From contig OZ260661.1 in the NCBI GenBank assembly GCA_965285935.1, positions 47,554,001 to 47,618,000 on the forward strand: 64,000 nt of DNA. Direction: 5' to 3'. Below, in pieces: positions 541 through 36,684 of this stretch. The DNA is from Ophelia neglecta. Taxonomy: Eukaryota. The stretch's first letter is position 1. Each line of letters starts with the position of its first letter. A program made the translations under genes and the position numbers. Below the pieces are notes generated by a model. That model searched no databases. It worked only from the letters and a program-made list of their open reading frames with translations, and was not told the DNA's origin.

Positions 541-660
541 TATTATCATTATTATTATCATTATAATTATGCACTATTATTATGTAGTATTATTATGTAG
601 TATTATTATGTAGTATTATTATGTAGTATTATTAATAGTTTTTTTTTATCATTATTATTA
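455..660. repeat. (ATT)n microsatellite followed by degenerate ATT / TATTATTATGTAG repeats
   Basis: Perfect (ATT)n from about 455 to 537, then degenerate copies including several TATTATTATGTAG units up to about 660. Confidence 0.95.
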
Positions 661-3774: not shown

Positions 3775-3838
3775 ATGTATTGGATTGATTGTTTCAACGT
3801 CCCTTTAATTGTGGGGGTGATTGTATCAGTAAGTACTG
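3775..3838 (+). other. First coding exon: signal peptide MYWIDCFNVPLIVGVIVSVSTA
   Basis: ATG in an ACAATG context just after a pyrimidine tract plus CAG acceptor (3756), implying an upstream non-coding exon. The hydrophobic core is followed by a small-residue cleavage site when spliced in phase 1 to 4582. Confidence 0.65.
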
Positions 3839-6800
3839 GTTTGTTTTAATCAAACAAGATAATTGCAATTTTACAGTCAGCTGTCCATGTGTTTTTATGT
3901 TGATCTTATTACTGTATTTCAAAAATAGGTTTTGGTGAAAGTGAAAGGTGACGGCACTATAGAGAGACTGACTAGTAAGTACACAAGTACAAGAAATAGG
4001 TAGTCAACTCAATCTCATGTATTGGTTGCATAGTTTATTATATTTTTATTGCATACTATTTGCGGAAACGTGAACTTGTTACAAATTAAGGTCTGTTAGA
4101 TTTTGTATCATTGTGAGAGAACAACAAACGATATCATATTATGACGGTTACTAGTATAAGCACTGTTATGGCTTCAAGAACACAATGATCTTATTTGGAT
4201 TGCTGCATAAATGTATTGCGTTTGGTATGTTTATAACGCAAGAACCCCCCCCCCCCCACCCCCCATTTTTTATATATCATTTCACCTTTGTCATATAAAA
4301 TTACCAAGATTCGTGCTGTATAAGCATGTGACAAGACGCGCGAATTTTAGATTAACACAAAGGATTTTTTCCACGAGACCTGCATGCTGTCACTCCTGCT
4401 GATGCTGTCACGTAATTCACATTTGTACTCCCACCCCCTTCAACAAGTCCTACGTTTTTCTCCTGTTTGCCCTTTACTGGTGGTTCCTTATACTACTTCG
4501 GGCCGTTTTAATGGATCATTCTTGATAAATGATTTTGCTTTGTCTGCCGGTTATCCAATCCCGTTTATTTTATGTTTTCAGCTGATAAACGTTGGTATTG
4601 GGCATTTGATGATGAGGCGCCAACAGACGATAATCCAATGAGTCTTAATATTACAACAATCGGGTCGCCCTCTCCCCGAGTTGAGGCCGGTAAAAGCCGG
4701 AATTCATATAAAGTGGACGCTACTCACTCCTACGAGATTCCTTTCTCACAGTCATGCGTTGCTGCTGTCAATTGCAAAAATGGATACACCGTCGCATTTT
4801 GGATTCAGGTAAAAAATACATTGAAGGCTCTTTTAACTTATGATGTCCGATTAAAGTAAACTCTGCATTGATTGTTTTTAATCTTAATACAACTGTTCTG
4901 TTTAAAAGGTGCCCGGTGACCCGTCAGGAAACCAGATTGTGCTAACTTCAGGTGGTGAAGTTTCTCAATACGGAGGATTTGCGGTTGAACTTGACGGAGA
5001 CAATCGTTATATTACAGTGAAAGCAACCGACTTATGGCGAGACTATCAAAATATTTCGTCCCCCATCGCCAATGGCACTTGGACCCACATAGCTTTTATT
5101 GTGGACCCCGCCATGCCTGGCATCCAATTCTGGAACAATGGAACCTACGTCGGGTAAGAAATACCAACTTAAAACTGGGTAATTTAAAAAGATGGATAAA
5201 TGAATTAAGGTCTTTGTTTTGGGTTAAAACATACATACACTTTCATATTGAGTAATTCTTGATATTACCAAATGGTTTCCCCGTGTGAAAATGCTTCGTA
5301 TTAAATAGCATCATAATCTCTAGATGTAAGATTCAACGACTAAGCATTAAGGACATCGAAGCATATATGTATTTTGCACTCAATCCTGAAACATTTAACA
5401 TAAAATGTGTGTTTCTGTTACTACAGGTACCAGAACCTTACGATTGGGCGTGGTACCCCCCTTACCAAGTACCTTGATAAGCTCTACTTAGGTAAGAGTA
5501 ATCTGGGTACATATAGCACCAGCGATTTCTGGATCGATGAGTTACATATATGGGAAATGGATGCCAGTGTTGGGCAAATACTATATCTGTACGGTAGGTT
5601 GAGCGTATTACGCACATATATCCTGAATATATTACCTAAAATTGGGCCCCTTAATTGGGCGACTGGGATGCAGTGCGGTAGGGCGAGGGGGAAGGGGGTA
5701 AGGCTAATGCACACAAGATGTATAATGCATCAAACATTTACAGATAGGCTAGGGACAAGCGTTTCACCAAATAAAGTATGTTCTATATATTATTTAAAGT
5801 GACGAATAGCTGGTTTTAAATATTTTCACTTAAAAACTTGAAAGTTGATCTATTCAGTGCAATCTAACACAAATATATTTCAGAATTACCGAAGACCAGT
5901 TATTGACAATTTTGACAGTTATACCATTGTACCAGTTTAACCATTGCAAATAACGGTAGTTTTCAATTGTATCAATTTTGTATTTGTGTAACCCTTCTTA
6001 ACCACAGGCCTATCTGCGGAATCGACGGAGCACCAATTTAAGTTAGATTTTGATTATATTTACGAGAACAATCTAATATCGGGAGGGTTTTTGGCACGCG
6101 TGGTGGCAGGCACAGTTAAACAGATACGGGGACGATATTCGAAGGGACTTGAGGTCACTCAAGATTCGGCACTTCACATAGGTGAGCTATTCTAATATTT
6201 ATCCAGACAGCAGTGTTTTTCGTCCAAGATTCCGAAAATCTATCTGATCAGATATGATTTGACCTGTGCATATGATGTTTTCAGGAACTTTCCAAAACTG
6301 TATCCAATACAAGCAGACGCCAGGTCCGCCCACCGAAGACCACTGGTGTATAAATGGGTTTAACCTTGACTTCTGGATCAAGATTGAGTCACCATTAAAT
6401 TACAACAATGAAAGGTAGGCTTAATTGTTTAAGTGTGTTAAATTTTAAAAAGGGAACAAAGCGTGAGATATATTAATTTCATATGCAAACTCGACTAGTG
6501 TCTTTCATAATGTTCACAACCTGCTCTGCCTAATATATAAGGTAAACATTGATCATTTTAGATACATACTCGGAACAGTGGATTTACTGAACGATTTTAC
6601 CAAGTCTGGATTTATGCTCATGCATCAGCCACAGCATGGATGCGCGCTAAATTTTACTGTTAGGACACAAGAATTTTACCAGCACATAAGATTCAAGTGT
6701 GATTACAACGCTTGGTATAAATTTGGCATTGGCTATCATCCAGCGGTCGGTGGCTATTACAGAGCCACCACCGAGCGAAGGTTTTCCCAAAGATATGGAA

Positions 6801-9800
6801 ATAAAATTGAAAACCTCTTCACCATGGCCAAGGTGTTCGTAACAAACTTGTATAGTTTTACAAGTCCCAGCATTCTTTATCTCGGTAAATACCAAAATAT
6901 TCTCTTAAAACACAACGAAAATATACGCGTATAAAACGTACAAACGGACGAGTTCAGTGTTATTGCACAATCGTTTTTAATTGTAAACAATTAAAGTCTT
7001 GACAGGACTTTAATTACTTTAAGATTGAAGATTCCAGGAAAAGTCTAAATCCTTTTATTACATGTAGAACGCTTCTGAATTACGTTTGAAATTGGCATCA
7101 ACACCCTAAAGAAGAAGTGATTAGGGTATATTGAACTAATATGAATTCTCATAATGGGAGTACGTTTTATTTCCAAAACATAATGATTAGAATAAAGGTT
7201 TATTATTAACATTGCAGGTCATCAAACAAATGGAGCTCACTTCTCTATAGATGAATTGTTCATATCAGGGATAATTATTTCAACAACCGACTTGGTAAAA
7301 TTAGGTATATAAGAAATCAATGTGGTTTGTGATGTTTTTCTTCAGTACAGTAATATGAGTAGGAAATCAACATTCAAGTTTTATATAAACGGAATTTGTT
7401 TAACAAAACACTCATCAGTCATATCTCCGTCTGTCTAATTACCATTGTTTTTGCACACTTTCATTTAAAGTTTAATCACGTATCTATTATACAGATCCAA
7501 TACATCGCTATATATGGAGGTACAGAAATACGGGCAGCAGAGAGGTTAGCGTTGTCAAAGGTCCATATAACAGGTTTTCTGCCACGCTTACTTGGATACA
7601 CAGAGGTTGGTCTGATTCCAAAGTGAAAAGTTACCTGACGAGACTTTCAGACGCGGTACGAATGAAAATAACTACATAATTATATATATTTACATATGAC
7701 ATTCATATTAATGGCATAAGTATTTTATGTGTGTGCTCTCTTTATAATTATTTACATACATGTATGACAGCTATAGGAGAATGGCTAAAATAAATGTAGA
7801 GAAAAGCGATATATAAGTGACTATAAGAAGTGTTTGTATACTTTCCACCAAAATAAAGACCCAACAAGTGAAACTTATAATACCAAATCGTAGCAAATCT
7901 CATATCTATTTGATATGAAGACAGTTGAACATCATGTAATTTTTTCATTGAATCGAACCAAATGAAGTCATGATTTGCGGACACCGCTGGATTTTAACGA
8001 TGAATATTGCAGTTGTATTGCAAATGCTTAAATTTTCCCCAGATTACCAAGTGTGGGTTTTGAAATTTATTTCTCAATTTTTCAATTGTAGCCTATAACG
8101 GATTTCTGTATGTTACAGAGTTTTTATTTCAATGGAGTGAATGCTTACGGGCGATACCGAAAAGACCAGATGTCGTCTGCCTCATGGCGAGATGTCGAGT
8201 ACAGCCGAGGTTTCAGTCTTCGCTTCAGCGCCTACCAAATTGGTACTCCAGCCACAGTCTCCAAGGCGTACTACATGGACTCGGGTGGTATTACGGAAGA
8301 AGATTGGGGTTTCTGTGTTTACTATGACTCTGGTTTTCTGAATGTTGTGGTGAGCACAAGTCGGTATGAATGGCGGCAACTATTGCCTTGGGGATTCCAT
8401 CAGTGGATTTATTTTTCGATGAGCTGGTATCCTGATCTCGGAATGGAAGTTTTCCTAAACCACTGGAGCCAGGGACTATTTACAAACAAAACAAAAAGAG
8501 CCAATCCTCAAAACCGCCCTTCTCAGTCGTCCGAGTATTGGTACTATGGAAGAATCGAGTCCTATCAAGGGACACTTGATGACGTATTGCAGCCGATGTA
8601 CATAGAACACATCGTTTACCATGACAGGGCATTCGAAGAACCATATTCCTTTTATAAAACAGGTGATCAATTATTCCAGGTATCTTAGTATTCGCATTTC
8701 ATAGTTTTAAAACTTCCTTTTTTTCTTTAGAAAGAATGTAAAACGGCTGCCTTGAAATCGATTATTTGTTTACTGGTAGGGTGAAGTAAGCATATTCGGC
8801 CTCCCTTTTTGTCAATTTTGCATTCTGCCACGCGGGCAGAGTTCCTGGTTTGCATTATGTTTCCAATCAGAATGTTATTTATAAACACGAAATAAATTAT
8901 CTAAAAATGCTCATAGATACCAAATATTGTTATTCATGAAGATAGTTTGATACCCCAAAGTTAAAATATCAGGGTGTCTTTAATGCAGCCGAAATCAAAG
9001 TTGGTTTCCTTTGTCAATAACTTACGCATATATCTTCTGCTAAATTTGTTGACATCTGACAAAACATGTTTTTTTTTAAATTTTACCAAGATATCGAAGG
9101 TAAAATGTATAAATACAGAAATATAAACAAAAACACTAGGGGGCCGGACTTTTGGTCCCACTAACCTATTTGATAATGTATTATTTCGTCCCCTCTGTAC
9201 CCAAATACTTAACCCCGTGATTATACTTGTGATTTCTGCATTCTAATGCGTATATTTGCGAAGTTCAAAGATGAATACTCAACGAGTTTATCCTAACATG
9301 ACGCGTCTTGAGGAGGGGTCTCATTTGATTAATTCCATCAGTCTCATTGAAAATCAATATCCAGTAGATGACTCTTGAAATAGGGTCATGTGGGTCTTCT
9401 TCATAGGCCTACTGATTATCATCATATATTACATGTGCTCCCGTCCAGTCTTGATGTAGCATGTCTAGCCATCTTATAAAGTGGACATCATTTGAATGCA
9501 ATAATCTATGCCCGCACTACTTGTTCTGTTCAGATTGAATAGGTAATTTCGATTTTATCTATTAAATCCGTCCTAATATTTATTTAATTATAAATCATCC
9601 ATTAAATCCGTTCTTATTTATTTTATCAGGCAATTTATTTAAACCAACCGAAAATTTTATATTATTGGCTTGTAACCGCCAGAAATGATAAAAATAATTT
9701 AGTTGTGTATAACACCATACTAAATGTAACATGTACTTATGTGGTGTCTCTTAGACAGCGACGATAAGATATTCATTATTACAAATATATAATAGCAAGA

Positions 9801-12800
9801 GATAATAAGATAGTTGGATGTTATATAGGGAGATATTAGGAAAGGTAAGTCAAGCTTTCTGTCGGCTAAAACTGGCCCTGTGTATTGTGTGCATCGCCTG
9901 CCCCGAGCTTGGTCGATTTGACCTATGACCGGTTTCTAACATTTCTATTGGTAGTGGAATATGTGGTACCAAACAGGCAATTTTCTCTCCTAAATAGGCT
10001 AATTATTATTAATTGTTTTCTTTGATCTATGAATGTGTGCGAAACAAATGCTTCAGGTGCGTGGAGCGACAATTCAGCAGGGAAGGAGGAGTTTGTAATA
10101 ATCCGGAAAGATACTATGTATACGAAAGGAATTGAGCATTGTTGAACTGAATATAAATTTCTCTGTTTTTTTTTAATCCCAGGAATGATATCTCACACGG
10201 CCCACCATGATGAATACTACCATACATGCAACGAAGGACCCAAGACTAAATTGTCTCGTCACATATGGAACGCGTCAAATGATTTTGACAATATGCACTC
10301 TGGTGCGTGGTTGAACGGAACGTTGCTGTTTCAGCTCTATGGCGAGGCGACACAAGTGTGGCGGAATGATTTCTTCCGGTATGCAGTAAGGCTTAATGGC
10401 AGTTCCCAGGTTGTTCGCTCAGATACGCTAGTCACTCAGTGCGTAAGCACACCAGGTGAGGAGAATATGGCCACTGATTCCATGCAAAATGGACAAAAAA
10501 TGGGGAGAAAGATAATCAAGCAAAATCCGAAATTATTAAATTATTTTACTCCGCAAAGTACCACTAAAAGTACAATCAAGCTGTTCTGGAGTAAATTAAG
10601 AATTATGGCGCTCTTTATTTCGACAATGCATTAATGATTGATTAAATCTAGAGCTAAATGTGCCCTGTGACCTTTTTTCGTAATAATGATTTATCAATGG
10701 GTGTATTTACTCGTCGTGCTTTATGATTTGATACATTTCCGTACATATTTCGTACAAATAAAGCTTACAATTCGCGCATGCATTGATATGCCTTTATCTC
10801 CTCTTCTCTTTGTGTTTAAGACATAATCTGAACCACTGATTTTTCAGAAAATACCTTCTTTCGTTTTTGAGGCCAAACATGTATCATTGTGTGTCTAAAC
10901 ATGCTTATTTCTATTCGTACCCAGTCTAGATGCGTTGGGATACAATTCCGTTCACAGCGGTAACAAATTCCGTAACACGTCTTCAAATTAATGTCTCCGA
11001 AAAATTACGGTTATCATTGCGTCTATGATCGAAAAAATTACATATTAAAAAATTTTGAACTCTTTCAAAAACATACAAGTATCCCAACTGAAGTCACCAA
11101 ACAAGTATTAGAGTAGCGGCTATAATTGCATCCGTTGTCGAATAACATTAATCTTAAAACAAGTTTAAGGTTAATCGGAAGTTTACAAAAATTCATTTGG
11201 AAAGGAAGATTCTAAAACATACATGGCCTATCTGTCACATTCCCTTCACTTATATTTGGGCGCATGCGCTTACGGGTTTTATACGATGAATGATTTAGAT
11301 GCCTTGTTCCGCGGACGCCAACAGTTTTGAGCATGCGCCAAAATGTCGGCATGCACCTTCAGTTTTAAAATACCGTGCGGCCACCGTGGAACTGCACCGT
11401 AGAGTCAGTCGGGGGAAATCCGGGGACAAACGTGTTTAACCGTAGTCAAAATCTGAAGCCGATTCGCCAAGGCTGGCTACGGATATGTCACATTGTTCCA
11501 CGGCTTCGCCCAGGTGCTGCCCGTTTCTGTCCCCCCTGTAGTAAGGTTCAGCCGATTCATGCCAAATTCCCAGGGTTGTGCCCCGGTTTATGTCGATTTG
11601 ATGCCGAAGGGCCGCTACGATTTCTCCCGTTTTTTAGCCACAGTTCGGCACAATGTGAACGATTCTATTGTCAAGTAAAAAAATTAAAAAGACTGACCTA
11701 AAGAGTGAAGCTATGTGTCTTAAATTTGTTCGTCCAGCTATATAATAAACATTAATTAACAATACAGATTCAATAGAAGCGTAATCAGCAATTAGAATAT
11801 TATATCTTATAACAGCTAGCAATTAGTTGCTTGGTGGTAACACGATTACAAGTATTAAATTGAATAGCGTGCACGCAAGTCATTTTATCCAATATCAGTA
11901 ATATACATTTAATGTTGATATTTTTACAGATGGTTGTTATGCACGAAACGAAATGATATCCTTCTGGATCAAACCACTCAATTTTCTGACCGTTCCTGAT
12001 GCACAAAAACAAACAATCCTTTGGATAGGTACGGCTAACATCACTGTTCTAGAGATCTTCCGATATAATGGCACAAACAAACTTGTGATCAGCGCCAAAT
12101 CGGAGCAGTGCACTATAAACATACCTTTGGAAGATAATGCTTGGACATGGGTGACTTTTTATTGGGCTTTCCGTAACTATGCCAACACTATTGGCGAGAT
12201 GTGGGTCAATTTACACACGATGAATATTACCGAGAGCGTGGTGTGCACGGCCACCACAAGAGAACCGATCACTGATATTACGGGACGTATTATTTTCGGG
12301 GGAGAACCAATGATGGATATAGATGGGCCATACCAGGCTTTTACCAACATGGATCTAGATGACATATTTTTGATGAGTACGTTCCATAATGTACACCCCT
12401 ATTATATGTCTTCTTCTGGGAAAACTTGGGGCAAGCGCAACAGAAATCAAAATTGGTTCTCGCCATTCCATTATCTATCAGGAACAAATGCAGTGGAGCT
12501 ATACGGTGAGTCACATAAGACACTTTCTATATGGTGGCCGGGTTCCCCTGGATATGTAAAACACACGAATATCTGCGTTGTCTCCCTTTTTTCAACCATA
12601 ACTTATAATTTAAATATAGTTTATTTGCTATGACTTTATTTACACCCCGGGACACGCATTTTAACTTATTTCTATGTTGTGTGATTTCAGCGGCACCCAC
12701 TTGTGTATCGTACGTTGACATAGGAAAATTTCCTTCCGACTTACCGAAACTGCGCATCAAACCATACGACAATACACCATTCTATGTTCAATGTCGTCTT

Positions 12801-13519: not shown

Positions 13520-13566
<47 letters not shown>

Positions 13567-27222: not shown

Positions 27223-27257
<35 letters not shown>

Positions 27258-30200
27258 CGGAGGTATGAATGATATGTAAATAATATTGAATTTGGAAAGA
27301 AAAATAATCTGCGTTTCGACTCAAAACACTCGTCTATGGTGATATGGTGATACAATTGTTATACTCAGGTTGACGGTAAATGTGGGAGGCAAGGTTCTGC
27401 CCAAACGAAAACCAATGCGGAAGACACCATGAAACGTACCAAGGTAGTTCTATTTCATATTTCTACTCGGGGTTCAAGACGTAGGTCCGAATGCATTGTC
27501 AAATGATTGAATGAATAAAAATATTAATAATATGAATAATGAGACTTCATGAGCATAGGTTGAGGGAGAGATTGGCAGTGGATAATATTTGATAGAATTA
27601 TTTAGAAGTGAATGAGGAAATGTATGCGTGTGACTATTGCAGGCTCGCTCAGAACTAATCAACAAGCTGGACGCTGCGTGCGTTTTGTTGTCAGGGGGGA
27701 TGGCAATACAGCAGGCAGCAGAGACACTAAAAAGCCTCACTAAATCTACCTTCGAACTCACTCATGGATCCATTGTAAGTATTTGTTCACGATTATTTGA
27801 TGATTGCTCTATTGACATTAACCAAAGCGTGTGCACCCACAATTCTATTCGCTTCGAAAGGCTACTATCAGACAATTCGACATTATACCAATGGCATATT
27901 TTTTCCTCAGATACAATCGGCTGGTCTCATTGATATTTTGGCCAATTATTTGGGAGATACAAAAAACCTTAGCCCTAGCGAAGTACTCAAAACTAGCGAT
28001 GGTAAGGAGCGACTTAGTTAAATATCTAATGGGATCCAATATAGTTATTTACTCGGGCAGGGGTAGAAAAAAGTACACTTGATGTAGCACGAAGGAATGA
28101 TTTAGAATGGGATTGTGCTATATCGTTGAAAACAATTAGGGAAAAGGGAAGAGAAAGGGACAAACAAACATTGCATCATTGAATCAGTGTTGAACTAGTG
28201 TTCCTATTTAACAGAAATATTAGGAGTTATTTCCAACCTGCTTGAAGCAACTTTGCCCGCTAAAATGGTGTTGAAGTACCAGACTGATTTCGAGGGCCCG
28301 GATGAAGAGAAAGAAATCAAACGAAAAGCAGCGAAACTCGCAGCCGAAGAAACGTTACAAAAACAGAGAAGACTAGCAAGGAACGTTGTCCCAAAACTAG
28401 TAGACATAGTGGATTTAATTCGAAATAGTGTTCTGAAATCCAAACTACCTGGAGAAAAGTCTGTGTCACTGGGATCCTCAGATCAGCTTAAGGTCACCCA
28501 CTGTTTTTTATTCGTACAGTTCTGTAGTCCATTTTGTTTTCGTCCAATAAGAGAAACTTTGACTTACCAATAACGTATTCTAACGTATTTTGCACCTCCT
28601 TCTATAGCTTATTCTACAAAGAACTAAAAGAAGAAGTTTGATAGGCCTTGGAATGAACGTAGACAGCGTGTCTGTCACTCTGCCCGAAGAAGATATTTTC
28701 AGTGGCTACATTGGTGCCTCTGTAGATTTCCAGGTAGAGCCAGTTATAATTTTGATAGAGTCTACTACGTTTGAAACGTTAGTAAACATAAACCCCTTTT
28801 ATCATAATGCGACTAGAGGCAAATGGAAAATAGCATCTGCTGCAGCTTGAATTTCCAGGAGTAATTAAATGTGATTGATAATCGGATTTGAATTATCACA
28901 TTGTAAGTTAACCCATGTTGAATGAATCCCATGTAAAACAAATGCATCTGCCAATAGATGATGACGTCAAAGAAGAATCTGTATAGTTGGGATGACACCT
29001 CAGTGCGGGCCAAAACACAGTTAGCAGGAATGAAATTCGTTGGGGAAAACGGACAAGATCTCCTGGTGAAAAACCTGAAGAAGGAAATAGAATTCACATT
29101 ACCTTATACGAGTATTACACAACCTATCCCAACCAAAATTATCGTTGATAATGTGGAGAAACGCAACAATGATTTGGTGCTGCATAATATTAGTTTTTCT
29201 CCACCTACTACGGCGATCGAGTTCACGATTAAGCCCCATCGAGAAAAGCAAATTTATGATTTATTCATTAAACTCGGTAGCATTGCCAGTGATAGTGATT
29301 ATGATTTAAAGATGTCCGTCAAACAAGAAAATGGCTTCTCTTTTGTATGGACAACCCCGCCAGTAAATGGAACATACTTTGTCGCAGTTAGACAAGGTAA
29401 CCAACCCACGCCATTGTTTAATTCTAAGAAAATAATAATGACATATCTATAAGTCATACATATAAGGAAGTATACCAAAGCGATGTTATTATGTTACAAA
29501 TGGGGAATTGTTAGATACTTTTCTGTGTGACTTTCCTTTTCACCATCCTTGTCGTTTGTGTATTGGTGGCCTTTGTTCTTTAAAGTCACACGACGGCAGC
29601 ATCAGAAAATAGAATACACTGCTTATGTGAACATGTTTGGCTGTATCTACTGGGACGAGGGCATGCAGATATGGACCGATGACGGCTGTGAGGTGGGTAT
29701 GATATGTAGATATTTTAGGGGTCGAATATACCCTTACCTACCTTATTTTCTGTTGATTCAATTTGCTACATATATGTAAACCTTTTCCCACATTAAGTGT
29801 GTGAAATAAAAAAAAACATAATTGGGGGATCGGAACGTTTGGGGTGAACTTACCGATAATTCGATATGGTGGTATTGTTTGGGTGGGGGAGAGGTTTGCA
29901 TTCTACCAAGGAAAAGTAATACGTCACACTTCTAAAACATTATCATTTGTGGGGTACGAACTTATTTTCTGAAACGAAAATTTAAGGAATGGTTTGTCGC
30001 AATAGCGGCCTTATCACGTGGCATTTCCGTAAATATAAAACATTAATGGCAAAAATACACAAAACAAAATGTATACACTACTGATCATTTTGTCATTATA
30101 ATTATTATATCCCTATTTTATTGATACAAGGCTAAGACGGCAAATCCGACATCCGTCGTCTGCGCTTGTAACCACCTGACGTTCTTCTCGGCGGATTTCA

Positions 30201-33200
30201 TGGTTGCCCCTAACACCATCGACTTCAACACGGTGTTTAACAAGTTTGCCGATATTGGTGACAACCTTGCAGTGCTCCTGACAGTTATAGGCATCATTGT
30301 TCTCTTTTGGATTGGAATATTAGTTTTACGACGCCTGGACCAAAGAGATTTAGAGAAGGTGACAATCAGATTACTTTGCCCCATAGGTCCATACTTATTA
30401 ATGTTTACAGCTATCACAAAATTTGCGTCCTATTGGAAAAAAGGAGTTCTAAAATGACAAATTGTGCCACATGTTTAACTATGAATAAGTTCATCGGTTC
30501 ATTTGAAAACAAACAAATTTGGCTTGCATTGTAGTGGAAGGTTCGGCCATTGTTAGACAATTCCGACCAAGACTTGTATCGATACGTGATGACAGTGATA
30601 ACTAGTAACAAGGGAGGCGCCGGTACCCGGTCAAAAATCTACTTCATCGTTGTTGGAGAGGACGGAGACTCTGACGTGAGACTTCTTGACGACGGTGTCA
30701 GAAAGAAACTGACGTCTGGCAGCATCAATCACTACTTGGTGACCACTCCTCAAGACATTGGATGTCCTACATTCCTACGCATCTGGCATGACGGAAGTGG
30801 TGTTGGAAACAAGTCATCCTGGCACCTAAAAGAAGTGGTGCTTCATGATGTGCAGAAAAAAGAAAGGTAAGTCCCGTCTTGTTTGGGCAGCAGTGTCAGA
30901 TAGGGTATCACATATTTCAATACTGTTTTTACCTATCACACTTGCAGGTTCCATTTTGTATGCGACGCCTGGCTTGCGGCGGACAGAGGGGACGGGGCGG
31001 TTGAGCGGCTTGTACCACAGACTTCACCGGAAGAACTCAAACAGTTCGGTCGCCTGTTTGATATGGCTTCCCGAAAGGAGATGTGTGATCAACATCTGTG
31101 GGTCTCAGTGTTTTCTCGTCCTACCCGCAGCTCGTTCACCCGTGTCCAGCGCTGGGGATGCTGCGTATCCCTTCTTTTCACTAGCATGATCGCCAGCGCC
31201 ATGTGGTTTGGCCGCCTGGATGAGGAGGAGGAAAAGGGACAGCTAATTAAACTTGGACCATTCGTATGGTCCACTAAACAATTCTTTATCGCCACCATGA
31301 CGTCAATAATCGTGTTTCCGGTAAACTTGGTTATCATACAGCTTTTTCGCAAGTCAAAACCCTCCCAAGACGAGCAACAGGTAAGTAGATAAATGTTTGC
31401 GTTTACTCCAATCATCATTTTGCGTGATTATTACTGACACATAAATCAAAACTATACCAAATTCATGGTCTCTCATTTTTGAAGGTTATTCGAACAAATG
31501 AGCGTCCGACGACTGCCGCCCAGAGGGCGCGTCGCACCGCTTCAGCAAGCCGTATAGCCCTGGAATACTCTCTCCCCATGTCACCTCGATATGGGACATC
31601 CTCTCGCGAAATTCAGCTTAGTATAAAGCGAAATGATCTTGAGGCAGAGTATCTGTCTGCACTTTATGAGGTGATTATATATATAAATTTAACTTTTTAA
31701 ACAAATGTTTAGCCTTAGGAACCCTTACTGATTATTCATATGTCAGATTGAAATTTGATTTACCAAATTCTAGGATGATCCTGATAAGTCGACTCAGCAC
31801 AGCAATGTTTTCAAACAACGATGGTGGAATAAAGAACACTTTTTGCCTCACTGCTGTATCTACATGGCATGGTTTTTAGTGTTCCTGTCGGTAGTGGCTT
31901 CTGGCAAGTACAAGTCGTCATCATTAGGCCTATCTCTCTCTCTCTCTCTCTCTAGCAGGGGCTAGCTTACATAAATTACAATTTAAAACAAACCAATATT
32001 GTGATATTTGCAATATCTGTATAACCAAACTACAAAGAGTCAGACACTTTAACAACCCAATGATACTCCCGTTTCATTCTATTTACAGGTGGATCGATTC
32101 GTGTATAATGTTTTTCATGCTTTTGAAACTGTTTGGTTATAATCTCTTGGTTTTACTCTCCATTCAACAGCTTTTTTCGTGATTCTGTACAGTGTTGAAT
32201 GGGGTAAAGAGATGTCCGAAATGTGGCTATGTGCTATGTTTATCAGTCTCGCGGAATCAGTTGTCGTCATTCAACCGCTCAAAGTTCTGGCTGTTGCGAT
32301 TCTCCTGGCTCTAATCTTCAAAGACCCAGTGATGAATGAAGAAATACGCCTGTCAGGCGACGAAGAAAAAGACAAAAATCAATCTGATTTCCATATAATG
32401 GCAAGGGGTACGGGTGAATTGATTTCAAAACCACATGTATAGTGAAGCTCATTTTCAAGTATTTGAATATGATTATATTGTGCGATTTCATATCTGACTT
32501 CGGAAAACGTATCACTCAAATAGTATTTTGTTCCAGCTAATCGATCAAAGAATAAAATGACATCATTGGACGCCACCAAAATTGATGAAATGAAAGAACG
32601 AAACCGAAAGCAGTCGATAATCGAAGGCAACTTAATGCAGATTGTAGTGTATATATTTTATCTTGTCGTTTTAACAATCATTGCCTACGGACAGAGAGAC
32701 CCTATGGCCTTTTTTGTCACCAAACATGTCCAGGATTACCTGATTAAACCAAATCAACCGACATTGCATATTGGACCCAAGGCATTTCACAACGTGAGCA
32801 GAAAGATTACTCATTTCATATGTATAAATAACGCCATCTTTGCCATTTAGTAAAATTGATGACATTCGGAAATAGTTTTTGTTTTGAAATAATATGTGAA
32901 TAATGATAACGCTTAAATTATATTGGAATATAGGAAATAAAATTAATGTTTTTCTTCAGATCCGCACATTGCAGGATTACGAGAACTGGGCCAATGAGGT
33001 ATTCTTGCCTACTTTGATGCCTACATATCTTTATAATGGGGACAAAATAGGTGACTGGAGACATGTGCGTTTTGGTTCCTTCGAGGGCAACTACTATCGG
33101 ATCGGGCTCACTCGTCTGAGGCAACTCCGAGTGAAGAAAAGTGAGTAGCCTATTGGACACAAGTTAAAAAAAACAATCATGTTGGTTTTTCGCACAATGA

Positions 33201-36200
33201 ACCATCATTTAAATGATAACGTTACTGTTTTGTCATGGGTGTCCTAGACTATGAGTTTTTCTTTCCATGTGTGTTCGTCGTTTTTGTCGCTTTGCAAGCC
33301 AACTTTAATGCATCAGTCGTCTTGTTTAATTCTGAACATAAATGGCCATGATAATGATTTGTATGCTGTCTAATTCACAGCGCCATATTGGTAGGTCAAA
33401 TAGATAGATTGTGATAGCAGATCGACATGTTGTAAATGTCGACATATAGAAAGATCGTCAAACAGAATAACCGACAGATAGATTTGCGGACTTATCAATA
33501 GATACTTCGGTACATCGATAGATATATTAACATACAGACAGATCGACAGATATGCCGACCAGGAGATAGATTGACAAATAGGAAAATTGATAAATCTGAA
33601 TACATCGATAATTCTATGTTTTCTTCCATGACCAATGACTATGCAATCCAGTATAATAAATGTGGGCTAGGACTCTCTTTATTACAAATTCCATTGAAAT
33701 AGATAAAGATACAGCAATAAAAGTAAACAGTTCCCGTACGTGAATGCATGTGCGTTTGTGTATCAATACCATGCATTGAATAATGTGTCGGAGTTTGTAA
33801 GTGTTGAAAACCTGCATGGGTGAACAAAATAACCGTGATGGGTTTAGGGTACTGCGCAGCCCCGAACAGGAGTGGCTGTGGAATGTTTTGTTCCTGAGTT
33901 TGATGGGCTTCAGGTTTGGCACACCCAGTCCCTTGACCAAAGACAGGCTAAGCTTGAAATAAATAAGAACGAGCGGGTGAATCGCGATGCCAAGGGGTAA
34001 CCAACTCTAGTGCGAGCTTTCAGTGTACTCTTTCATGTATTATTCTTCAATGTCATATTGAGAAAGCTAAAGTCGGACTTAGTTTTGAAATAAATGAACT
34101 ATACTTTTACTTTATATAATAATGAACGTAATGCTCAATTTAATCATTGTGCCCTCATACATTGTACTTAGTTTTAAATCTTAATTTTATTAATTGAAAT
34201 CGAAGACACATATTACTTTCCTAATTATGTTGCAGAACTTTGCCACAATTACTGGAAACTCGATGCCTTGTTTAATGAAGAATGTAACTCTGAGTACTCG
34301 GGTACTACCGAGGACACTAGCCATTACCAGGGAGGATGGGACGTCCCTGGTAACGCTACAGTGGGGAAAGATCCCTGGATTTATCACCAGGCACACGAGC
34401 TGCAGACTATGCCTCTTTGGGGGAAGTTAGCAATCTACGGCGGAGGTGGTTATGTGTTTTACCAGTATCCTCTCTATGGGCGTGCGGCAAAGGAGCAGCG
34501 AGCGATGTTGGATCTCAAATGGTTAGATCGATACACCCGAGCTGTTGTGGCTGAATTTGTCGTCTACAATGCCAATGCTAACACGTTTGCGTGTGTGTCC
34601 ATTCTAATGGAGATGTCAGCTTCAGGGAGTATCACGAAATGGTGGGATGTGAACGTCCTAAATCTGTACAGCTACTCTGGAAACCTAGCCCTCTTCAGAA
34701 TATGTTGCGAGTTTATTTTCTGTACATTTCTCTTGTTTGAAATCTACAAACTTATCCGATCCCTGCTGAAAAATAAGAAGAAGCATTTCAAGGATCTACG
34801 GAGTTATGTTGACGTGCTTCTTGTACTCGGCTCGGTCGTAACAGTCACTCTGTACATCGTCAGATTTGTTCTGGTTAAACGAGTGATGCGGGAATTTGCT
34901 GACAATAAAGGTATGAATTAAATTGTAAAAAGTGAAAAAGTAGGGAGGGGGGGGGGGGGCAGAAATTTAATTTCCGAGAGATGAGGGGATTCCACTGAAG
35001 GTGTGAAGTTTGAGTATACGAGTGTGCAAAGTGGGATAGGAAAGAAGGAGGGGATAGAAAAGTGTTGTTAGGCAAGAAGGGCTGAACACGGGAGTCGACA
35101 CACGGCAGACAATATAGAATAATTAATCAGGGAAATATTAGTCCTTTTCGGTCAGGAATTCGAACCTTCAGCTGTAGGCCCACAAGTATTGATCGCGAGT
35201 TCCCAAACTATGAATTAGTTGTTATAGAATTGCCAGTAAAAAAATAATACAATTATATCATATATCACTTTCTATGATTAGTAGACTAAGGTTGTATATT
35301 ATGTCAGTGGCTGGTAATGCTACCATGGGACTGACCTTTAATATAAAAGTGAGACTATTGCGGGATTTGTCACAAGAAATATAAACCAAAGAAGGATGTA
35401 GAGAGTATAGTGATCATAAGAGTGAAAGAGACTAAAGGTATAATGGGATGGCTAAAACCTTTAATTGGCTCTTAGAACAGAAACATCTACTTGAATATAC
35501 AAAGACGGGGACATCTCCCTCTTCCTCTTTGTCCTGTTTATAAAAATGGTATTTAAAAAATCCTTCCGAAGCAGAGATTCATATACTCTTCTTGTTAAAA
35601 ATGTAGGTTTAATATAACACTGTGATTTCGATCTTTTCAGACGGGGATATAGAATTCAGTCGACTGGGGTTTTATAACCGGATCGTGACCTATGCCACCG
35701 GGGTGTTGGTGTTTTTGTCTACAGTACGCATGCTGTGTCTACTGACATTCAACAGCCGAGTCGAAATGATATGCCGCATTCTAATCATCTCCTCTTCTTC
35801 TTTGACTCATTATGCACTTACGTTTTTTATTATTATGGCCTCATTTACCTGTTTTGCTTTCAAAGTGTTTGGTCCCAACATCGCTGCTTATGCTAGTATT
35901 GTTTCTTCATTTGAAAGTCTGCTAGCTGCCTTTGTTGGCGCGCGCATGTTTAACGCAATGGATACTGAGGACTCGCCCCTCGGGAGAGCATTCTTTCTCA
36001 TTTTTGTTCTAGTTATGCTGTTCATTATGACAAATATACTTATTAGTATTTTGACTGATGCAATGGCCACTGTGAAAGGGGAGTTGTCCGAAAAGATCAA
36101 CAACGATGAGTACTTAGCTTTTGTAAACGAACGCTTGAGGGACCTGCTGGGTTTCGACAACATTCTACCATGGAGTACAGGTCAGGCAAATGACGTATTA

Positions 36201-36684
36201 ATGGTTTAGTATTCGCGACATCATTTTAATAAATTCCCAATGAAAGAAGCCGTAATATTAACTAACGTATCGATGTTATCAAGCGGTGGATCAGGCAGAA
36301 TAGGCTACGGCAGAAAATCTTGCACCACCTTTTAAGGAATATATATCTAATGGTATTTTGTCTTTTTTGGTGTGTGAAATCGTGTCGAATTTTATTGAAA
36401 TTCTGTTCTGTCTTTCAGATCGTAAACCAAGGTCGGTAACTGTCGGCCTACAATGTGATGGTCCTGGTGACTCAGGGACGGGGGACTCCCACACCACAAA
36501 CGTCCTGCATGTAGAGCCAGCCGGGCATGCCCCTTACCCCGACTGGTCCCCAATGCCAGGGGACAGAAGAAATTTTTGCAGCACTGGTTTGGGTGAGGAA
36601 AGGCATCAACTTGCCGATATCATCAAAAACTACGGCTATTCCAAAGGAATAAAAATGAGAAAGTCAAAGATGTCCGTTCTATAG
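3775..36684 (+). CDS. Giant polycystin-1-like (PKD1/REJ family) receptor, about 6,017 aa, 45 predicted coding exons
   Basis: Manual exon chain with compatible phases at every junction (18,054 nt): 3775-3838, 4582-4808, 4909-5153, 5427-5593, 6008-6181, 6285-6414, 6562-6884, 7218-7304, 7495-7655, 8092-8662, 10183-10455, 11930-12505, 12691-12813, 13638-13817, 14044-14188, 15473-15615, 15764-16206, 16336-16546, 16706-17371, 17507-18139, 18246-18914, 19066-23322, 23431-25513, 25932-26107, 26224-26391, 26485-26780, 27054-27203, 27369-27443, 27643-27774, 27911-28001, 28215-28492, 28608-28733, 28958-29396, 29586-29692, 30131-30358, 30535-30866, 30948-31380, 31485-31670, 31774-31903, 32171-32407, 32537-32793, 32960-33140, 34236-34910, 35641-36180, 36419-36684. 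Hallmarks: PKD repeats (xDFGDG-like), REJ (DARSATYDPD, NLPPYGGKCSVSP), GPS (CIYWDE...WTDDGC...CACNHLTFF), VAPNTIDF before TM1, PLAT (AGTRSKIY...LRIWHDGSG), HLWVSVFSRPTRSSFTRVQR, LRQLRV, YGGGGY, WLDRYTRAV. The C-terminal half is certain. Linkage of the N-terminal LamG exons into the same transcript is inferred from phase continuity and the absence of an intervening stop or signal peptide. Confidence 0.85.
4582..12505 (+). other. LamG/concanavalin-A-like (pentraxin-like) domains 1-4 of the polycystin ectodomain
   Basis: Repeated motifs C-x5-C-x2-G(Y/F)TxxFW, WTHIAF / WIYFSMSW / WTWVTFYW, and terminal IDELHIW / IDELFI / LDDIFL. Domains map to exons 2-4, 5-8, 9-10 and 11-12; domains 2-3 are more divergent. 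Confidence 0.7.
12691..15615 (+). other. Caspr/CNTNAP/neurexin-IV-type fibrinogen-like module (4 exons)
   Basis: Spliced translation: APTCVSY...PFYVQC...ALKSISISCKQKLSMSC...YWKDNGGVNRYYWGGADDDHIGKCDCGVRGFCTNSTSKCNCDGHAGWDKDEGWLKEKDRLPVKSL...WTIGNLIC. This fits the Caspr-family pattern YWGG..KCxCG..C..CNCD..W..D.G.L..K..LPV..LGPLxC. Confidence 0.85.
13517..13568. repeat. (TA)n microsatellite (interrupted)
   Basis: Seen directly; intronic. Confidence 0.9.
15764..18914 (+). other. LamG/concanavalin-A-like domains 5-8
   Basis: HWALD / YWSLD starts; CFTDVRQCLKGFSTALW, CLGRLDLCEKGLTLAFW, CLSNPTRCVRGFTISCW; WIHVAITW, WFHIAFSW, WTHTAFKW; ends LDEFWF, VDEMVF, IDEFYF, LDEIHIW. Confidence 0.9.
19066..19335 (+). 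other. WSC domain
   Basis: VGCY...MDPLTCRTYCNHTFRYVGLSEGVRCVC...CSTVCPGTSYVCGS...IY shows the 8-Cys WSC pattern. Confidence 0.85.
19430..24820 (+). other. Array of about 19 PKD-like Ig-fold repeats, mostly in one 4,257-bp exon
   Basis: About 93-aa units with GS/TN starts, (D/E/N)(F/Y/W)GDG cores, HxYxxxGxY and terminal (A/V)xNxxS motifs; 19 terminal motifs counted by eye. Confidence 0.85.
24821..30190 (+). other. REJ module and GAIN/GPS domain with HL|T autoproteolysis site (codons 30173-30181)
   Basis: IVIDARSATYDPDD, TNLPPYGGKCSVSPDRG, CSKWKDE, CNLPMG; GPS motif CIYWDEGMQIWTDDGCE/AKTANPTSVVCACNHLTFFS. Confidence 0.9.
27226..27256. repeat. (TA)n microsatellite
   Basis: Seen directly; intronic. 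Confidence 0.9.
30535..31010 (+). other. PLAT/LH2 domain
   Basis: YVMTVITSNKGGAGTRSKIYFIVVG...LRIWHDGSG...WHLKEVVLHD...FHFVCDAWLA, following TM1 as in all PKD1-family proteins. Confidence 0.92.
31934..31952. repeat. (CT)n microsatellite
   Basis: Seen directly; intronic. Confidence 0.85.
32537..36180 (+). other. Polycystin (TOP) domain and TRPP-like 6-TM region
   Basis: RLRQLRV, WGKLAIYGGGGY, WLDRYTRAVVAEFVVYNAN, RMLCLLTFN, GRAFFLIFVLVMLFIMTNILISIL. Confidence 0.92.

What the first reader, a model, noticed from the sequence alone, without database searches (positions are those of the whole stretch)
3775..36684. About 6,000-aa polycystin-1-like receptor with a neurexin/Caspr-like ectodomain (8 LamG + fibrinogen-like + WSC + about 19 PKD)
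Seen: one phase-consistent 45-exon chain joins eight LamG-like domains and a Caspr-type module to a complete WSC-PKD-REJ-GPS-PLAT-channel polycystin. Established: human PC1 (about 4,300 aa) has LRR, WSC, C-lectin and PKD domains at its N-terminus, and sea-urchin REJ proteins use C-lectin/EGF/SUEL-type modules. LamG arrays with a central fibrinogen-like domain define Caspr/neurexin-IV adhesion proteins. Inference: this is a chimeric adhesion-receptor / TRPP-channel subunit in which a Caspr-like head on a long PKD stalk could couple cell-cell, matrix or glycan binding to polycystin channel gating. I do not recognise this architecture from characterised proteins, but cannot exclude that it sits in automated annotations.
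Basis: partly seen in the sequence, partly recalled or inferred. Interest (0 to 1): 0.85.

Follow-up and report, generated by a model that had tools for sequence, protein, structure and literature searches.

The report
Giant LamG-headed polycystin-1-like receptor gene
A 33-kb gene in this unnamed invertebrate genome appears to encode a roughly 5,900-residue polycystin-1-type receptor/channel subunit whose outer end carries eight lectin-like LamG domains and a fibrinogen/collagen-propeptide-like module; the layout is real and conserved, but it is an elaborate variant of a known receptor family.

Summary
On the + strand, 3775-36684 carries a phase-consistent exon chain. My own chain has 41 exons and 5,876 aa, about 5,950 aa after two corrections.

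Domain order: eight ConA-like Laminin_G_3 domains (7 of 8 supported), split 4+4 by a cysteine-rich module. Then WSC, 17 clear plus 2 weak PKD repeats, REJ, a GPS with the canonical HL/T site, PLAT, about 11 TM segments and a PKD2-like pore.

No RNA data exist for this organism, so "one gene" rests on comparison:
- The WSC exon has no start codon of its own.
- A short phase-1 intron joins the last LamG to WSC at the same place in six loci.
- The whole layout is collinear in 3 paralogues of this genome and 5 loci of two unnamed ENA assemblies.

The "Caspr/neurexin-like head" is only partly right:
- The LamG domains are the LamG_3 class.
- No discoidin or EGF domain was found.
- The central module belongs to a family auto-named "neurexin-4-like" and related to collagen C-propeptide and fibrinogen domains.

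Simpler LamG_3-headed polycystins already sit in automatic annotations of Ptychodera flava, and LamG_3+PKD+REJ models in amphioxus. No paper found in four full-text searches describes a polycystin with LamG domains.

Verdict: new variant of a known kind, of moderate interest. The adhesion-to-channel coupling is inference.

The parts
3775..3838 (+). Candidate first exon: ATG plus a hydrophobic stretch (MYWIDCFNVPLIVGVIVSV), a possible signal peptide
   Evidence: Hydropathy 1.76 over 19 aa and a GT donor. It is not conserved in L002, and no RNA is available, so it is unverified.
4582..5677 (+). LamG_3 domain 1 (three exons)
   Evidence: Pfam Laminin_G_3, 29.3 bits, on 4906-5154. Collinear with L002 1821-2795.
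6008..7294 (+). Putative LamG_3 domain 2 (exons 6008-6181, 6285-6414, an unresolved exon inside 6467-6931, and 7198-7294)
   Evidence: LamG-type motifs are visible in the exon translations. Collinear weak matches to L002. hhalign is not significant.
8092..8662 (+). LamG_3-like domain 3 (single exon)
   Evidence: No Pfam hit. hhalign against the LamG6/7 profile gives 92.8%, E 4e-7. Conserved in L001, L002, L010, L022 and L023.
10183..12505 (+). LamG_3-like domain 4 (exons 10183-10455 and 11930-12505)
   Evidence: hhalign of 11932-12504 against the LamG6/7 profile gives 93.7%, E 1.8e-7. Conserved in L001, L002, L010 and L023.
12691..15615 (+). Cysteine-rich COLFI/fibrinogen-like module of the 'neurexin-4-like' type. 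Four exons: 12691-12813, 13578-13817, 14044-14188 and 15473-15615.
   Evidence: No Pfam or PDB sequence hit on the single exons. hhalign of exon 3 and exon 4 alignments against the neurexin-4-like/COLFI family gives 97.7% (E 1.4e-12) and 94.9% (E 4.6e-8), in collinear order. Exons 1 and 2 are collinear but not significant. The family profile hits procollagen C-propeptides and then FReD domains in PDB.
15764..16539 (+). LamG_3 domain 5 (two exons)
   Evidence: Pfam Laminin_G_3, 31.6 bits. 57% identical to L001.
16681..17371 (+). LamG_3 domain 6
   Evidence: Pfam Laminin_G_3, 27.1 bits, E 5e-6, just under the cut-off. 50% identical to L001.
17507..18139 (+). LamG_3 domain 7
   Evidence: Pfam Laminin_G_3, 38.2 bits. 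This exon was the query of the representative search.
18246..18914 (+). LamG_3 domain 8, ending at the donor AAG|gtatgc
   Evidence: Pfam Laminin_G_3, 29.3 bits. Donor read directly from the sequence.
18915..19065 (+). 151-nt phase-1 intron joining LamG8 to the WSC exon
   Evidence: GT..AG with phase 1+2. The same phase and position occur in L001, L002, L010, L022 and L023. The intron holds no ATG-led open frame that reaches the WSC exon.
19077..19295 (+). WSC domain
   Evidence: Pfam WSC, 32.4 bits, cut-off 27.8. The first ATG of this exon (19134) lies inside the domain.
19398..24803 (+). PKD (Ig-like) repeat array: 17 clear plus 2 degenerate repeats, across exons 19066-23322 and 23431-25513
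   Evidence: Pfam PKD, 112.3 bits. Iterative HMM repeat count.
24915..26786 (+). REJ domain (several exons)
   Evidence: Pfam REJ, 74.7 and 39.8 bits.
27054..30358 (+). Juxtamembrane GAIN-like region ending in the GPS motif CACNHL|TFF. The predicted cleavage is between 30178 and 30179. TM1 is at 30272-30328.
   Evidence: Pfam GPS, 22.2 bits, on the last 18 residues of the motif. Motif read. TM1 hydropathy 3.09. Exons conserved in L001, L009 and L022.
30583..30852 (+). PLAT/LH2 domain in the first cytoplasmic loop
   Evidence: Pfam PLAT, 50.3 bits. The best solved match is human polycystin-1, E 1.9e-6.
30948..33140 (+). TM2-TM6 region and the start of the polycystin (TOP) domain
   Evidence: Hydrophobic segments in exons 34-37 of my chain. 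Conserved in L009.
34236..36180 (+). Polycystin (TOP) domain and PKD_channel: last TM segments, pore helix and TM11
   Evidence: Pfam Polycystin_dom 95.8 bits; PKD_channel 34.5 and 68.8 bits. Solved matches are PKD2L1 5e-28, PKD2 4e-25, PKD1L3 1e-16 and PC1 1.5e-8.
36419..36684 (+). C-terminal tail exon and stop codon (36682-36684)
   Evidence: Chain end. Not conserved in L009, and no Pfam hit.

Best explanation
This is most likely a single, intact gene for a giant (about 5,900-6,000 aa) member of the polycystin-1 (PKD1/TRPP1, REJ) family.

**Shown**
- The domain order is [signal-peptide candidate] - 4 ConA-like Laminin_G_3 domains - one COLFI/fibrinogen-like cysteine-rich module - 4 Laminin_G_3 domains - WSC - about 19 PKD repeats - REJ - GPS (HL/T) - TM1 - PLAT - further TM segments (about 11 hydrophobic segments in all), with a polycystin/TOP domain and a PKD2-like pore.
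- This layout is conserved in three paralogues of this genome and in five loci of two other unnamed assemblies.

**Inferred**
- As in polycystin-1, the ectodomain is probably cut at the GPS and stays attached as a roughly 4,300-aa N-terminal fragment.
- The 11-TM C-terminal fragment probably takes the single odd position in a 1:3 tetramer with a PKD2-like subunit.
- Binding of glycan, matrix or cell-surface ligands by the lectin-like head, or force on it through the long extensible PKD/REJ stalk, would change stalk/tethered-agonist exposure and so channel or signalling output.
- The head is the same kind of LamG_3 array that adhesion GPCRs of other invertebrates carry in front of their GAIN/GPS domain. 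I read it as a shuffled ligand-binding cassette, not a piece of Caspr.
For: **Family membership**
- Pfam hits for every PC1 hallmark.
- The GPS motif CACNHLTFF followed by TM1 and PLAT.
- Channel exons match solved PKD2L1, PKD2, PKD1L3 and PC1; PLAT matches PC1.

**One gene**
- The WSC domain begins at the exon start, upstream of that exon's first ATG.
- The phase-1 GT-AG intron 18915-19065 is conserved in position and phase in L001, L002, L010, L022 and L023.
- The Ptychodera flava model XP_070579286.1 joins signal peptide, LamG_3 x2, WSC, PKD and REJ in one protein that is collinear with LamG7-LamG8-WSC of the window.

**Conservation**
- Exon-by-exon collinearity at 55% identity (L001) and about 30% identity (L002+L009, L010, L022, L023), from LamG1 to PKD_channel.
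- Paralogues at C8:82.11-82.17 Mb and C2:50.07-50.095 Mb.
- In a PKD/REJ tree the 8-LamG loci group together (88/90). Window-L001 (98/97) and C2-L022 (100/100) form orthologue pairs.

**Intactness**
- The full chain has no internal stops.
- Of 21 coding SNPs in the sample's own DNA contigs, 10 are synonymous, 11 are non-synonymous and none is a stop.

**Head type.** LamG_3 arrays sit in front of GAIN/GPS/7tm_2 in Lineus, Acanthaster and Antedon proteins.
Against: - There is no transcript evidence. No RNA run exists for this organism, and the three runs that hold the locus are DNA contigs without joints.
- The first exon and signal peptide are unverified and not conserved.
- LamG2 and the N-terminal half of the central module lack statistical support.
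- GPS cleavage, partnering with a PKD2-like subunit, ligand binding and gating are all inferred by analogy with polycystin-1. Nothing here tests them.
- The Ptychodera LamG-headed gene does not group with this family in the PKD/REJ tree. A common origin of LamG-headed polycystins is therefore unproven.
Confidence: 0.72

Rival explanations
1. These are two neighbouring genes: a secreted LamG/COLFI-like protein (3775 to about 19030) and a separate WSC-PKD-REJ polycystin. They would be kept adjacent by chance or by shared regulation, and the phase-consistent junction would be a coincidence.
For: No RNA evidence joins them. If the donor at 18915 is not used, the LamG8 frame reads on to a stop at 19028-19030. 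NCBI's pipeline split the related Ptychodera gene, and apparently the amphioxus one, into adjacent models.
Against: The WSC exon has no ATG before the domain and no signal peptide. The 96-560-nt intron has the same phase and position in six loci that are only 25-55% identical. The Ptychodera model joins LamG directly to WSC. The annotation splits in Ptychodera and amphioxus lie elsewhere (after REJ, after WSC), not at this junction.
Confidence: 0.08
2. It is one locus with several products. Besides the full-length form, alternative termination or promoters would give a secreted LamG-only protein and/or a shorter polycystin without the head, and the giant form would be rare.
For: A read-through stop lies 115 nt after the LamG8 donor. 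Very long multi-exon receptor genes commonly have such isoforms (general knowledge). Nothing here excludes it.
Against: There is no positive evidence for it. Conservation of the junction phase in all loci argues that the joined form is selected.
Confidence: 0.25
3. The head is a true derivative of a Caspr/neurexin-IV gene. It would retain Caspr-like binding (for example to a contactin-like partner) and link septate-junction-type adhesion to a TRPP channel.
For: The 4 LamG - central fibrinogen-like module - 4 LamG order recalls Caspr. The C-terminal half of the module matches a family that NCBI names 'neurexin-4-like'. The family profile weakly matches fibrinogen-related domains.
Against: All LamG domains hit Laminin_G_3 and weakly Pentaxin, never Laminin_G_1/2. 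No discoidin or EGF domain was found. The module also occurs at the end of a TSP1-repeat gene of the same genome, and as stand-alone proteins carrying Pfam COLFI, so it is a mobile module rather than a Caspr marker. The nearest LamG relatives are LamG_3 arrays of adhesion GPCRs, astacin/TSP1 proteins and amphioxus proteins.
Confidence: 0.1
4. It is a decaying pseudogene, or an artefact of chaining chance open frames.
For: Exon 1, LamG2 and the tail exon are not supported by conservation.
Against: Open frames of 1,437 and 703 aa are intact. The chain has no stops. Identity to an orthologue is 55% across some 25 exons. The SNP pattern is 10 synonymous to 11 non-synonymous with no stops. DNA contigs confirm the assembly over 15713-21399.
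Confidence: 0.02

Closest known systems
Human polycystin-1 (PKD1) and the solved PC1/PC2 complex (PDB 6A70, 8Z6B and others)
   Same: WSC, a tandem PKD repeat array, REJ, GPS with HL/T, TM1-PLAT, an 11-TM body and a TOP/polycystin domain. PLAT and TOP exons match PC1 chains.
   Different: The head is LamG_3 x8 plus a COLFI/fibrinogen-like module. From general knowledge, PC1 has LRR, C-lectin and LDL-A there instead. The protein is about 1,600 aa longer. The last six TM segments are much closer to PKD2/PKD2L1 (E 1e-28 to 1e-25) than to PC1 (1.5e-8).
PKD1L3/PKD2L1 complex (PDB 7D7E) and the PKD1-like/PKDREJ/sea-urchin REJ proteins
   Same: PC1-family proteins whose C-terminal 6 TM segments keep a channel-like domain. 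N-terminal modules vary between paralogues: C-lectin, EGF, SUEL and WSC in SpREJ1-10 (PMC1934368).
   Different: None of the ten SpREJ or five human members is described with LamG or a COLFI/fibrinogen-like module. The eight abalone TRPP1-like proteins (1,778-4,715 aa) are likewise described without LamG (PMC12980990).
Ptychodera flava 'polycystin-1-like' XP_070579286.1 plus the adjacent 1,506-aa model (automatic annotation)
   Same: Signal peptide, LamG_3 x2, WSC, PKD and REJ, then GPS, PLAT, Polycystin_dom and PKD_channel 1.9 kb downstream. It is collinear with the window's LamG7-LamG8-WSC, and a phase-1 intron precedes WSC.
   Different: It has only two LamG_3 domains, no central module and about 3,300 aa in total. 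It does not group with the 8-LamG loci in the PKD/REJ tree. It is uncharacterised.
Amphioxus models XP_078695245.1 (MAM-fn2-LamG_3 x5-WSC) and the 3,672-aa neighbour (LamG_3, F5/8C, PKD, REJ)
   Same: LamG_3 arrays combined with WSC, PKD and REJ at one locus on one strand, 26 nt apart.
   Different: They carry other extra domains (MAM, fn2, discoidin). No match to the central module was found. Gene boundaries are uncertain and the models are uncharacterised.
Caspr / neurexin IV (contactin-associated proteins)
   Same: LamG-type domains flank a central 'fibrinogen-like' domain (architecture cited from PMC12414531). The window's module matches proteins auto-named neurexin-4-like.
   Different: Caspr has an N-terminal discoidin domain, EGF domains, Laminin_G-type (not LamG_3) domains and a single TM segment (the single TM from general knowledge). 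None of these was found here.
Adhesion GPCRs with LamG_3/pentraxin arrays (for example XP_064639912.1 Lineus, XP_022103402.1 Acanthaster, XP_071941863.1 Antedon)
   Same: The same class of LamG_3 array (2-5 LamG_3 stretches scored per protein) sits on the extracellular side of an autoproteolytic GAIN/GPS receptor. These were among the best hits of the LamG7 exon.
   Different: They have a 7tm_2 body instead of an 11-TM polycystin body, and EGF repeats instead of WSC/PKD/REJ.

Membership tests
Polycystin-1 (PKD1/TRPP1/REJ) family | REJ domain | tested here: met
   Pfam PF02010, 74.7 and 39.8 bits, cut-off 25.
Polycystin-1 (PKD1/TRPP1/REJ) family | GPS motif with HL/T directly before TM1 | tested here: met
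   The sequence CACNHLTFF is followed 30 residues later by a TM segment. Pfam GPS scores 22.2 bits against a 22.5 cut-off on the partial motif in that exon. Cleavage itself was not tested.
Polycystin-1 (PKD1/TRPP1/REJ) family | PLAT/LH2 domain in the loop after TM1 | tested here: met
   Pfam PF01477, 50.3 bits. The best PDB match is polycystin-1.
Polycystin-1 (PKD1/TRPP1/REJ) family | 11 TM segments with a polycystin/TOP domain and a PKD_channel region in the last six | tested here: met
   Polycystin_dom 95.8 bits and PKD_channel 68.8 bits. About 11 hydrophobic segments by hydropathy. The topology was not modelled.
Polycystin-1 (PKD1/TRPP1/REJ) family | Tandem PKD (Ig-like) repeats in the ectodomain | tested here: met
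   Pfam PKD, 112.3 bits. The iterative HMM finds 17 clear plus 2 weak repeats.
Caspr / neurexin IV | N-terminal discoidin (F5/8 type C) domain | tested here: not met
   No PF00754 hit in any exon ORF scanned. Small unscanned exons cannot hold a 150-aa domain.
Caspr / neurexin IV | Laminin_G_1/2-type LamG domains with interspersed EGF domains | tested here: not met
   All LamG hits are PF13385 Laminin_G_3, with a weak Pentaxin hit. There is no EGF hit.
Caspr / neurexin IV | Central fibrinogen-like domain | tested here: inconclusive
   The C-terminal half matches the 'neurexin-4-like'/COLFI family at 97.7% and 94.9%. That family's profile hits procollagen C-propeptides (E 3e-4) and FReD domains (E 0.01-0.1). 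No bona fide Caspr sequence was available to compare directly.
Caspr / neurexin IV | Single-pass membrane protein with a short cytoplasmic tail | tested here: not met
   The chain continues into an 11-TM polycystin body.
Concanavalin A-like Laminin_G_3 domain (PF13385) | Profile match over the gathering score for each of the eight claimed domains | tested here: inconclusive
   Over the cut-off: domains 1, 5, 7 and 8. Just under it: domain 6 (27.1 against 27.6). By hhalign only: domains 3 and 4 (about 93%). Unsupported: domain 2.
Fibrillar collagen C-propeptide (COLFI, PF01410) | Profile match of the window's module to PF01410 | tested here: not met
   There is no Pfam hit on any of the four exons even at E 10. 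Only relatives of the paralogous module carry precomputed PF01410 hits.

The most novel reading that the evidence does not exclude
The 8-LamG plus fibrinogen/COLFI-like head is a dedicated adhesion or glycan-recognition device that defines an undescribed subfamily of polycystin-1 receptors. The three paralogues would be older than the split between this species and the organisms behind the ENA assemblies, and the subfamily may share its origin with the LamG_3-headed polycystins of hemichordates and amphioxus. In these proteins, ligand capture by a Caspr-like head would be transmitted mechanically through about 19 PKD repeats and the GAIN/GPS stalk to a TRPP pore. That would be a natural experiment in how polycystins sense extracellular contacts.
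Probability: 0.15. Interest if true: 0.7.

Novelty: new variant of a known kind. Interest (0 to 1): 0.45.

Why it matters
What polycystin-1 senses with its huge ectodomain is still an open question in polycystic kidney disease biology. This family keeps every hallmark of the polycystin body, but its head is a long array of lectin-like domains of the kind adhesion GPCRs use.

It therefore supports the view that GAIN/GPS receptors, both 7-TM and 11-TM, draw on a common pool of ligand-binding cassettes. It also offers a head that could be expressed and screened for ligands.

The finding exposes two practical problems. Such giant genes are split or missed by annotation pipelines, as in Ptychodera and amphioxus. 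And a widespread cysteine-rich 'neurexin-4-like'/COLFI-related module has no Pfam model that detects it here.

The value is comparative and hypothesis-generating. Domain shuffling at the N-terminus of PKD1-family proteins is already well known, so a specialist would be interested rather than astonished.

Tried and rejected
- **Central module, direct searches.** Pfam and PDB sequence searches on its four exons found nothing, even at E 10. ESM Atlas on the window's exon 14046-14189 gave no usable hit. The link to the module family came only through a paralogous module in a TSP1-repeat gene.
- **Central module, N-terminal half.** hhalign of module exons 1 and 2 against the family is collinear but not significant, at 2.7% and 5.7%.
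- **LamG2.** hhalign of the middle exon is not significant.
- **Homologue search with the 1,437-aa exon.** The search for homologous proteins returned only two unnamed ENA fragments. Its length filter excludes full-length relatives.
- **Homologue search with Ptychodera P0026, residues 60-600.** Only the query itself came back.
- **P0012.** This 5,869-aa hit of the LamG7 exon looked like a full-length relative. It is a bacterial VWA protein that matches only one LamG.
- **RNA evidence.** No RNA run was found. The three runs laid on 15400-21399 are DNA contigs with no joints. They confirm the assembly but say nothing about splicing.
- **Orthology with Ptychodera.** Its PKD/REJ part scores best on LamG-less REJ loci of this genome. 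It does not join the 8-LamG group in the tree, so a single origin is not shown.
- **First exon.** A conserved first exon was sought against L002 and none was found.
- **Joined protein.** All searches were exon by exon, by reference. The chain was checked only by coordinates, phases and split codons.

Full report
**Setting**

The window has no N runs. It lies at C1:47,554,001-47,618,000 of an unnamed 762-Mb, 223-contig genome. An earlier agent of this scan called the organism a lophotrochozoan (s1-734081); I did not verify that.

GC content is 29-44%. The + strand between about 4.5 and 36.7 kb is dense in open frames, including one of 1,437 aa (19017-23327) and one of 703 aa (23406-25514).

**The polycystin part is real and complete**

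Pfam on single exon ORFs gives:
- WSC (32.4 bits) and PKD (112.3 bits) in the 1,437-aa frame.
- PKD and REJ (74.7 bits) in the 703-aa frame, and more REJ in 26430-26786.
- The end of a GPS motif in 30125-30454.
- PLAT (50.3 bits) in 30535-30867.
- Polycystin_dom (95.8 bits) and PKD_channel in 34178-34918.
- PKD_channel (68.8 bits) in 35613-36206.

The GPS exon reads ...VVCACNHLTFFSADF..., the canonical HL/T site. A strongly hydrophobic TM1 follows 30 residues later, and then PLAT. Hydropathy finds about eleven TM-like segments in the right exons.

Against solved structures:
- The TOP/S1-S2 exon matches PKD2L1 (5e-28), PKD2 (4e-25), PKD1L3 (1e-16) and PC1 (1.5e-8).
- The pore exon behaves likewise.
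- PLAT matches PC1 best.

This is therefore a PC1-family protein whose last six TM segments keep a PKD2-like channel domain, as in PKD1L/PKDREJ-type members.

An iterative HMM seeded on one repeat finds 17 clear PKD repeats. Twelve lie in the big exon, one is split by the intron 23322|23431, and four lie in the next exon. Two sub-threshold repeats sit in a 195-aa gap.

**The upstream LamG array**

Laminin_G_3 (PF13385, ConA-like) hits fall on:
- 4906-5154 (29.3 bits)
- 15763-16215 (31.6 bits)
- 16642-17394 (27.1 bits, just under the cut-off)
- 17473-18147 (38.2 bits)
- 18218-19027 (29.3 bits)

The single-exon domain at 8092-8661 and the domain at 11932-12504 have no Pfam hit. Alignments of them with their orthologues match the LamG6/7 profile at 92.8% and 93.7%.

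The second domain (6008-7294) shows LamG-type motifs and collinear weak conservation but is not statistically supported. Eight domains is thus a fair count, with seven supported. They are LamG_3/pentraxin-like domains, not the Laminin_G_1/2 class of neurexins and Caspr. I found no discoidin or EGF domain.

**The central module**

Four exons (12691-12813, 13578-13817, 14044-14188, 15473-15615) encode a cysteine-rich stretch containing ...YYWGGADDDHIGKCDCGVRGFC...C(K) / CDG...DEGWLKEKDRLPV...GNLIC. No Pfam or PDB sequence match was found for the single exons.

A search of the genome itself found the same module in three further places:
- the two paralogues;
- the end of a TSP1-repeat gene at C2:32.027 Mb, where 136 aa of it lie in one open frame.

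That frame has about 190 relatives. Many are stand-alone 160-230-aa octocoral proteins that NCBI names 'neurexin-4-like', and many carry precomputed Pfam COLFI hits. ESM Atlas also puts it next to a 'neurexin-4-like' cluster and to COLFI/GON clusters.

Profile-profile comparison places the window's third and fourth module exons on columns 133-174 and 182-223 of this family, at 97.7% (E 1.4e-12) and 94.9% (E 4.6e-8). The first two exons align at the collinear places but without significance.

A 58-sequence profile of the family hits procollagen C-propeptides in PDB (E 3e-4 to 2e-3). It then hits FGL1, tenascin, angiopoietin-like and fibrinogen beta/gamma domains through its N-terminal sub-domain (E 0.01-0.1).

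It is not evidence that the head derives from Caspr, whose published architecture (discoidin, LamG, EGF, fibrinogen-like; PMC12414531) is otherwise not met.

**One gene or two?**

No RNA run exists for the organism. The three runs holding the locus are DNA contigs that lie colinear with no joints. They confirm the assembly over 15713-21399 and give 10 synonymous and 11 non-synonymous SNPs with no stops.

The case therefore rests on structure and comparison:
1. LamG8 ends at AAG|gtatgc (18914|18915). The next exon starts after tatatag| at 19066. The phases add up (1+2, codon G|AT), and the 151-nt intron holds no usable start.
2. The WSC domain starts at 19077, before the first ATG of that exon (19134). 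The polycystin part therefore needs an upstream exon.
3. A representative search with the LamG7 exon led to five loci: contigs of two ENA assemblies, ERZ25069296 (L001, L002+L009, L010, L022) and ERZ25069859 (L023). In them the same exons follow in the same order on one strand. In L002+L009 the order runs from LamG1 to PKD_channel within about 25 kb.
4. All of these loci have a phase-1 GT-AG intron of 96-560 nt at the same LamG8|WSC position.
5. Elsewhere introns differ between loci. LamG6 and LamG7 are fused in L002, and PKD plus REJ form one 2,511-aa frame in L023. The junction phase is thus conserved on a changing background.
6. The Ptychodera flava RefSeq model XP_070579286.1 ('polycystin-1-like', 1,775 aa) starts with a signal peptide and two LamG_3 domains. 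These align with the window's LamG7 and LamG8 and run straight into WSC-PKD-REJ. Its LamG|WSC intron is also phase 1, about four residues further upstream. A 1,506-aa GPS-PLAT-channel model follows 1.9 kb downstream, so the annotation split one gene.

I put the single-gene reading at about 0.9. Additional shorter isoforms remain possible.

**Gene model**

My dynamic programme (codon log-odds, generic splice scores, conservation bonus) gives 41 exons and 5,876 aa from 3775 to 36684. It has two known errors:
- It omits an exon inside 6467-6931.
- It chooses a poor donor at 19012 instead of the conserved 18914.

Corrected, the protein is about 5,950 aa.

Everything was done exon by exon, by reference.

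**Family and distribution**

This genome has at least 15 REJ loci, including a tandem array at C1:132.7-133.6 Mb. Only three carry the LamG/COLFI head:
- the window;
- C8:82.11-82.17 Mb, whose channel exon is 49% identical;
- C2:50.067-50.095 Mb.

In a tree of the last PKD repeats plus the REJ N-terminus, the 8-LamG loci group together (88/90). The orthologue pairs are window-L001 (98/97) and C2-L022 (100/100). The paralogues therefore predate the split of the two organisms.

Three LamG-less loci and the Ptychodera gene fall outside this group, unresolved and on long branches. A common origin with the hemichordate gene is therefore open.

Amphioxus has adjacent models: MAM-fn2-LamG_3 x5-WSC, and LamG_3-F5/8C-PKD-REJ. 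The next best relatives of the LamG7 exon are LamG_3 arrays of adhesion GPCRs (EGF-LamG_3-GAIN-GPS-7tm_2) from a nemertean and echinoderms.

**Literature**

Four full-text searches found no paper describing a polycystin with LamG or COLFI-like domains. The ten sea-urchin REJ and five human PKD1-family proteins carry C-lectin, EGF, SUEL, WSC and PKD modules (PMC1934368). Coral and abalone members are described with WSC/PKD/REJ/GPS/PLAT only (PMC4890752, PMC12980990).

**Verdict**

The single-gene chimeric architecture is well supported by comparison but not by RNA. The 'Caspr/neurexin-like' reading is only partly right.

The finding is a striking but evolutionarily unsurprising variant of the PKD1 family: N-terminal cassette shuffling on a conserved GAIN-11TM body. 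Simpler relatives are already present, uncharacterised and mis-split, in automatic annotations. The proposed mechanism is inferred by analogy with polycystin-1 and adhesion GPCRs: a lectin-like head on an extensible PKD stalk acting through GPS and a tethered stalk on a 1:3 TRPP channel.

Noticed in passing
window 38336-39397 (-) and 46832-47767 (-): Two long open frames on the minus strand each match Major Facilitator Superfamily MFS_1 (95 bits each). They are probably two neighbouring transporter genes or exons, lying downstream of the polycystin gene.
   Followed up: partly
window 53020-54456 (+): A 478-aa open frame matches the rhodopsin-type 7tm_1 family just over the cut-off (31.1 against 30.5 bits). 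It is probably an intronless GPCR gene.
   Followed up: partly
window 401-613: A long AT-rich trinucleotide microsatellite reads as poly-Ile or poly-Tyr in open frames, within a 29% GC stretch upstream of the gene.
   Followed up: no
G000:C1:132.73-133.63 Mb: A tandem array of at least eight near-identical REJ-domain genes, with open frames of 922-933 aa (one of 1,566 aa) on both strands. This looks like a recent local expansion of LamG-less PKD1-like genes.
   Followed up: no
G000:C2:32,026,700-32,031,900 (-); L013:1399-1806:-, L018: This gene has about nine thrombospondin type-1 repeats and ends in the same COLFI/'neurexin-4-like' module. The Atlas neighbours include GON/COLFI clusters, so it may be an ADAMTS9/GON-1-like protein.
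   Followed up: partly
proteins P0083-P0199: This is a large family of stand-alone 160-230-aa secreted-looking proteins, built of this module alone. It is heavily expanded in octocorals (Dendronephthya, Paramuricea) and in many unnamed ENA/JGI contigs. NCBI names them 'neurexin-4-like', and Pfam COLFI detects only part of them.
   Followed up: partly
L021 (Ptychodera flava CM083797.1) and L003 (Branchiostoma hybrid CM033051.1): RefSeq gene models appear to split single giant polycystin-like genes into adjacent models. The models lie 1.9 kb apart in Ptychodera and 26 nt apart in amphioxus.
   Followed up: partly
G000:C9:44,367,244-44,369,788 (+): Another locus has LamG8-like and Ptychodera-LamG-like matches (E 4.5e-6 and 3.8e-7) but no REJ hit nearby. 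Its identity is unknown.
   Followed up: no
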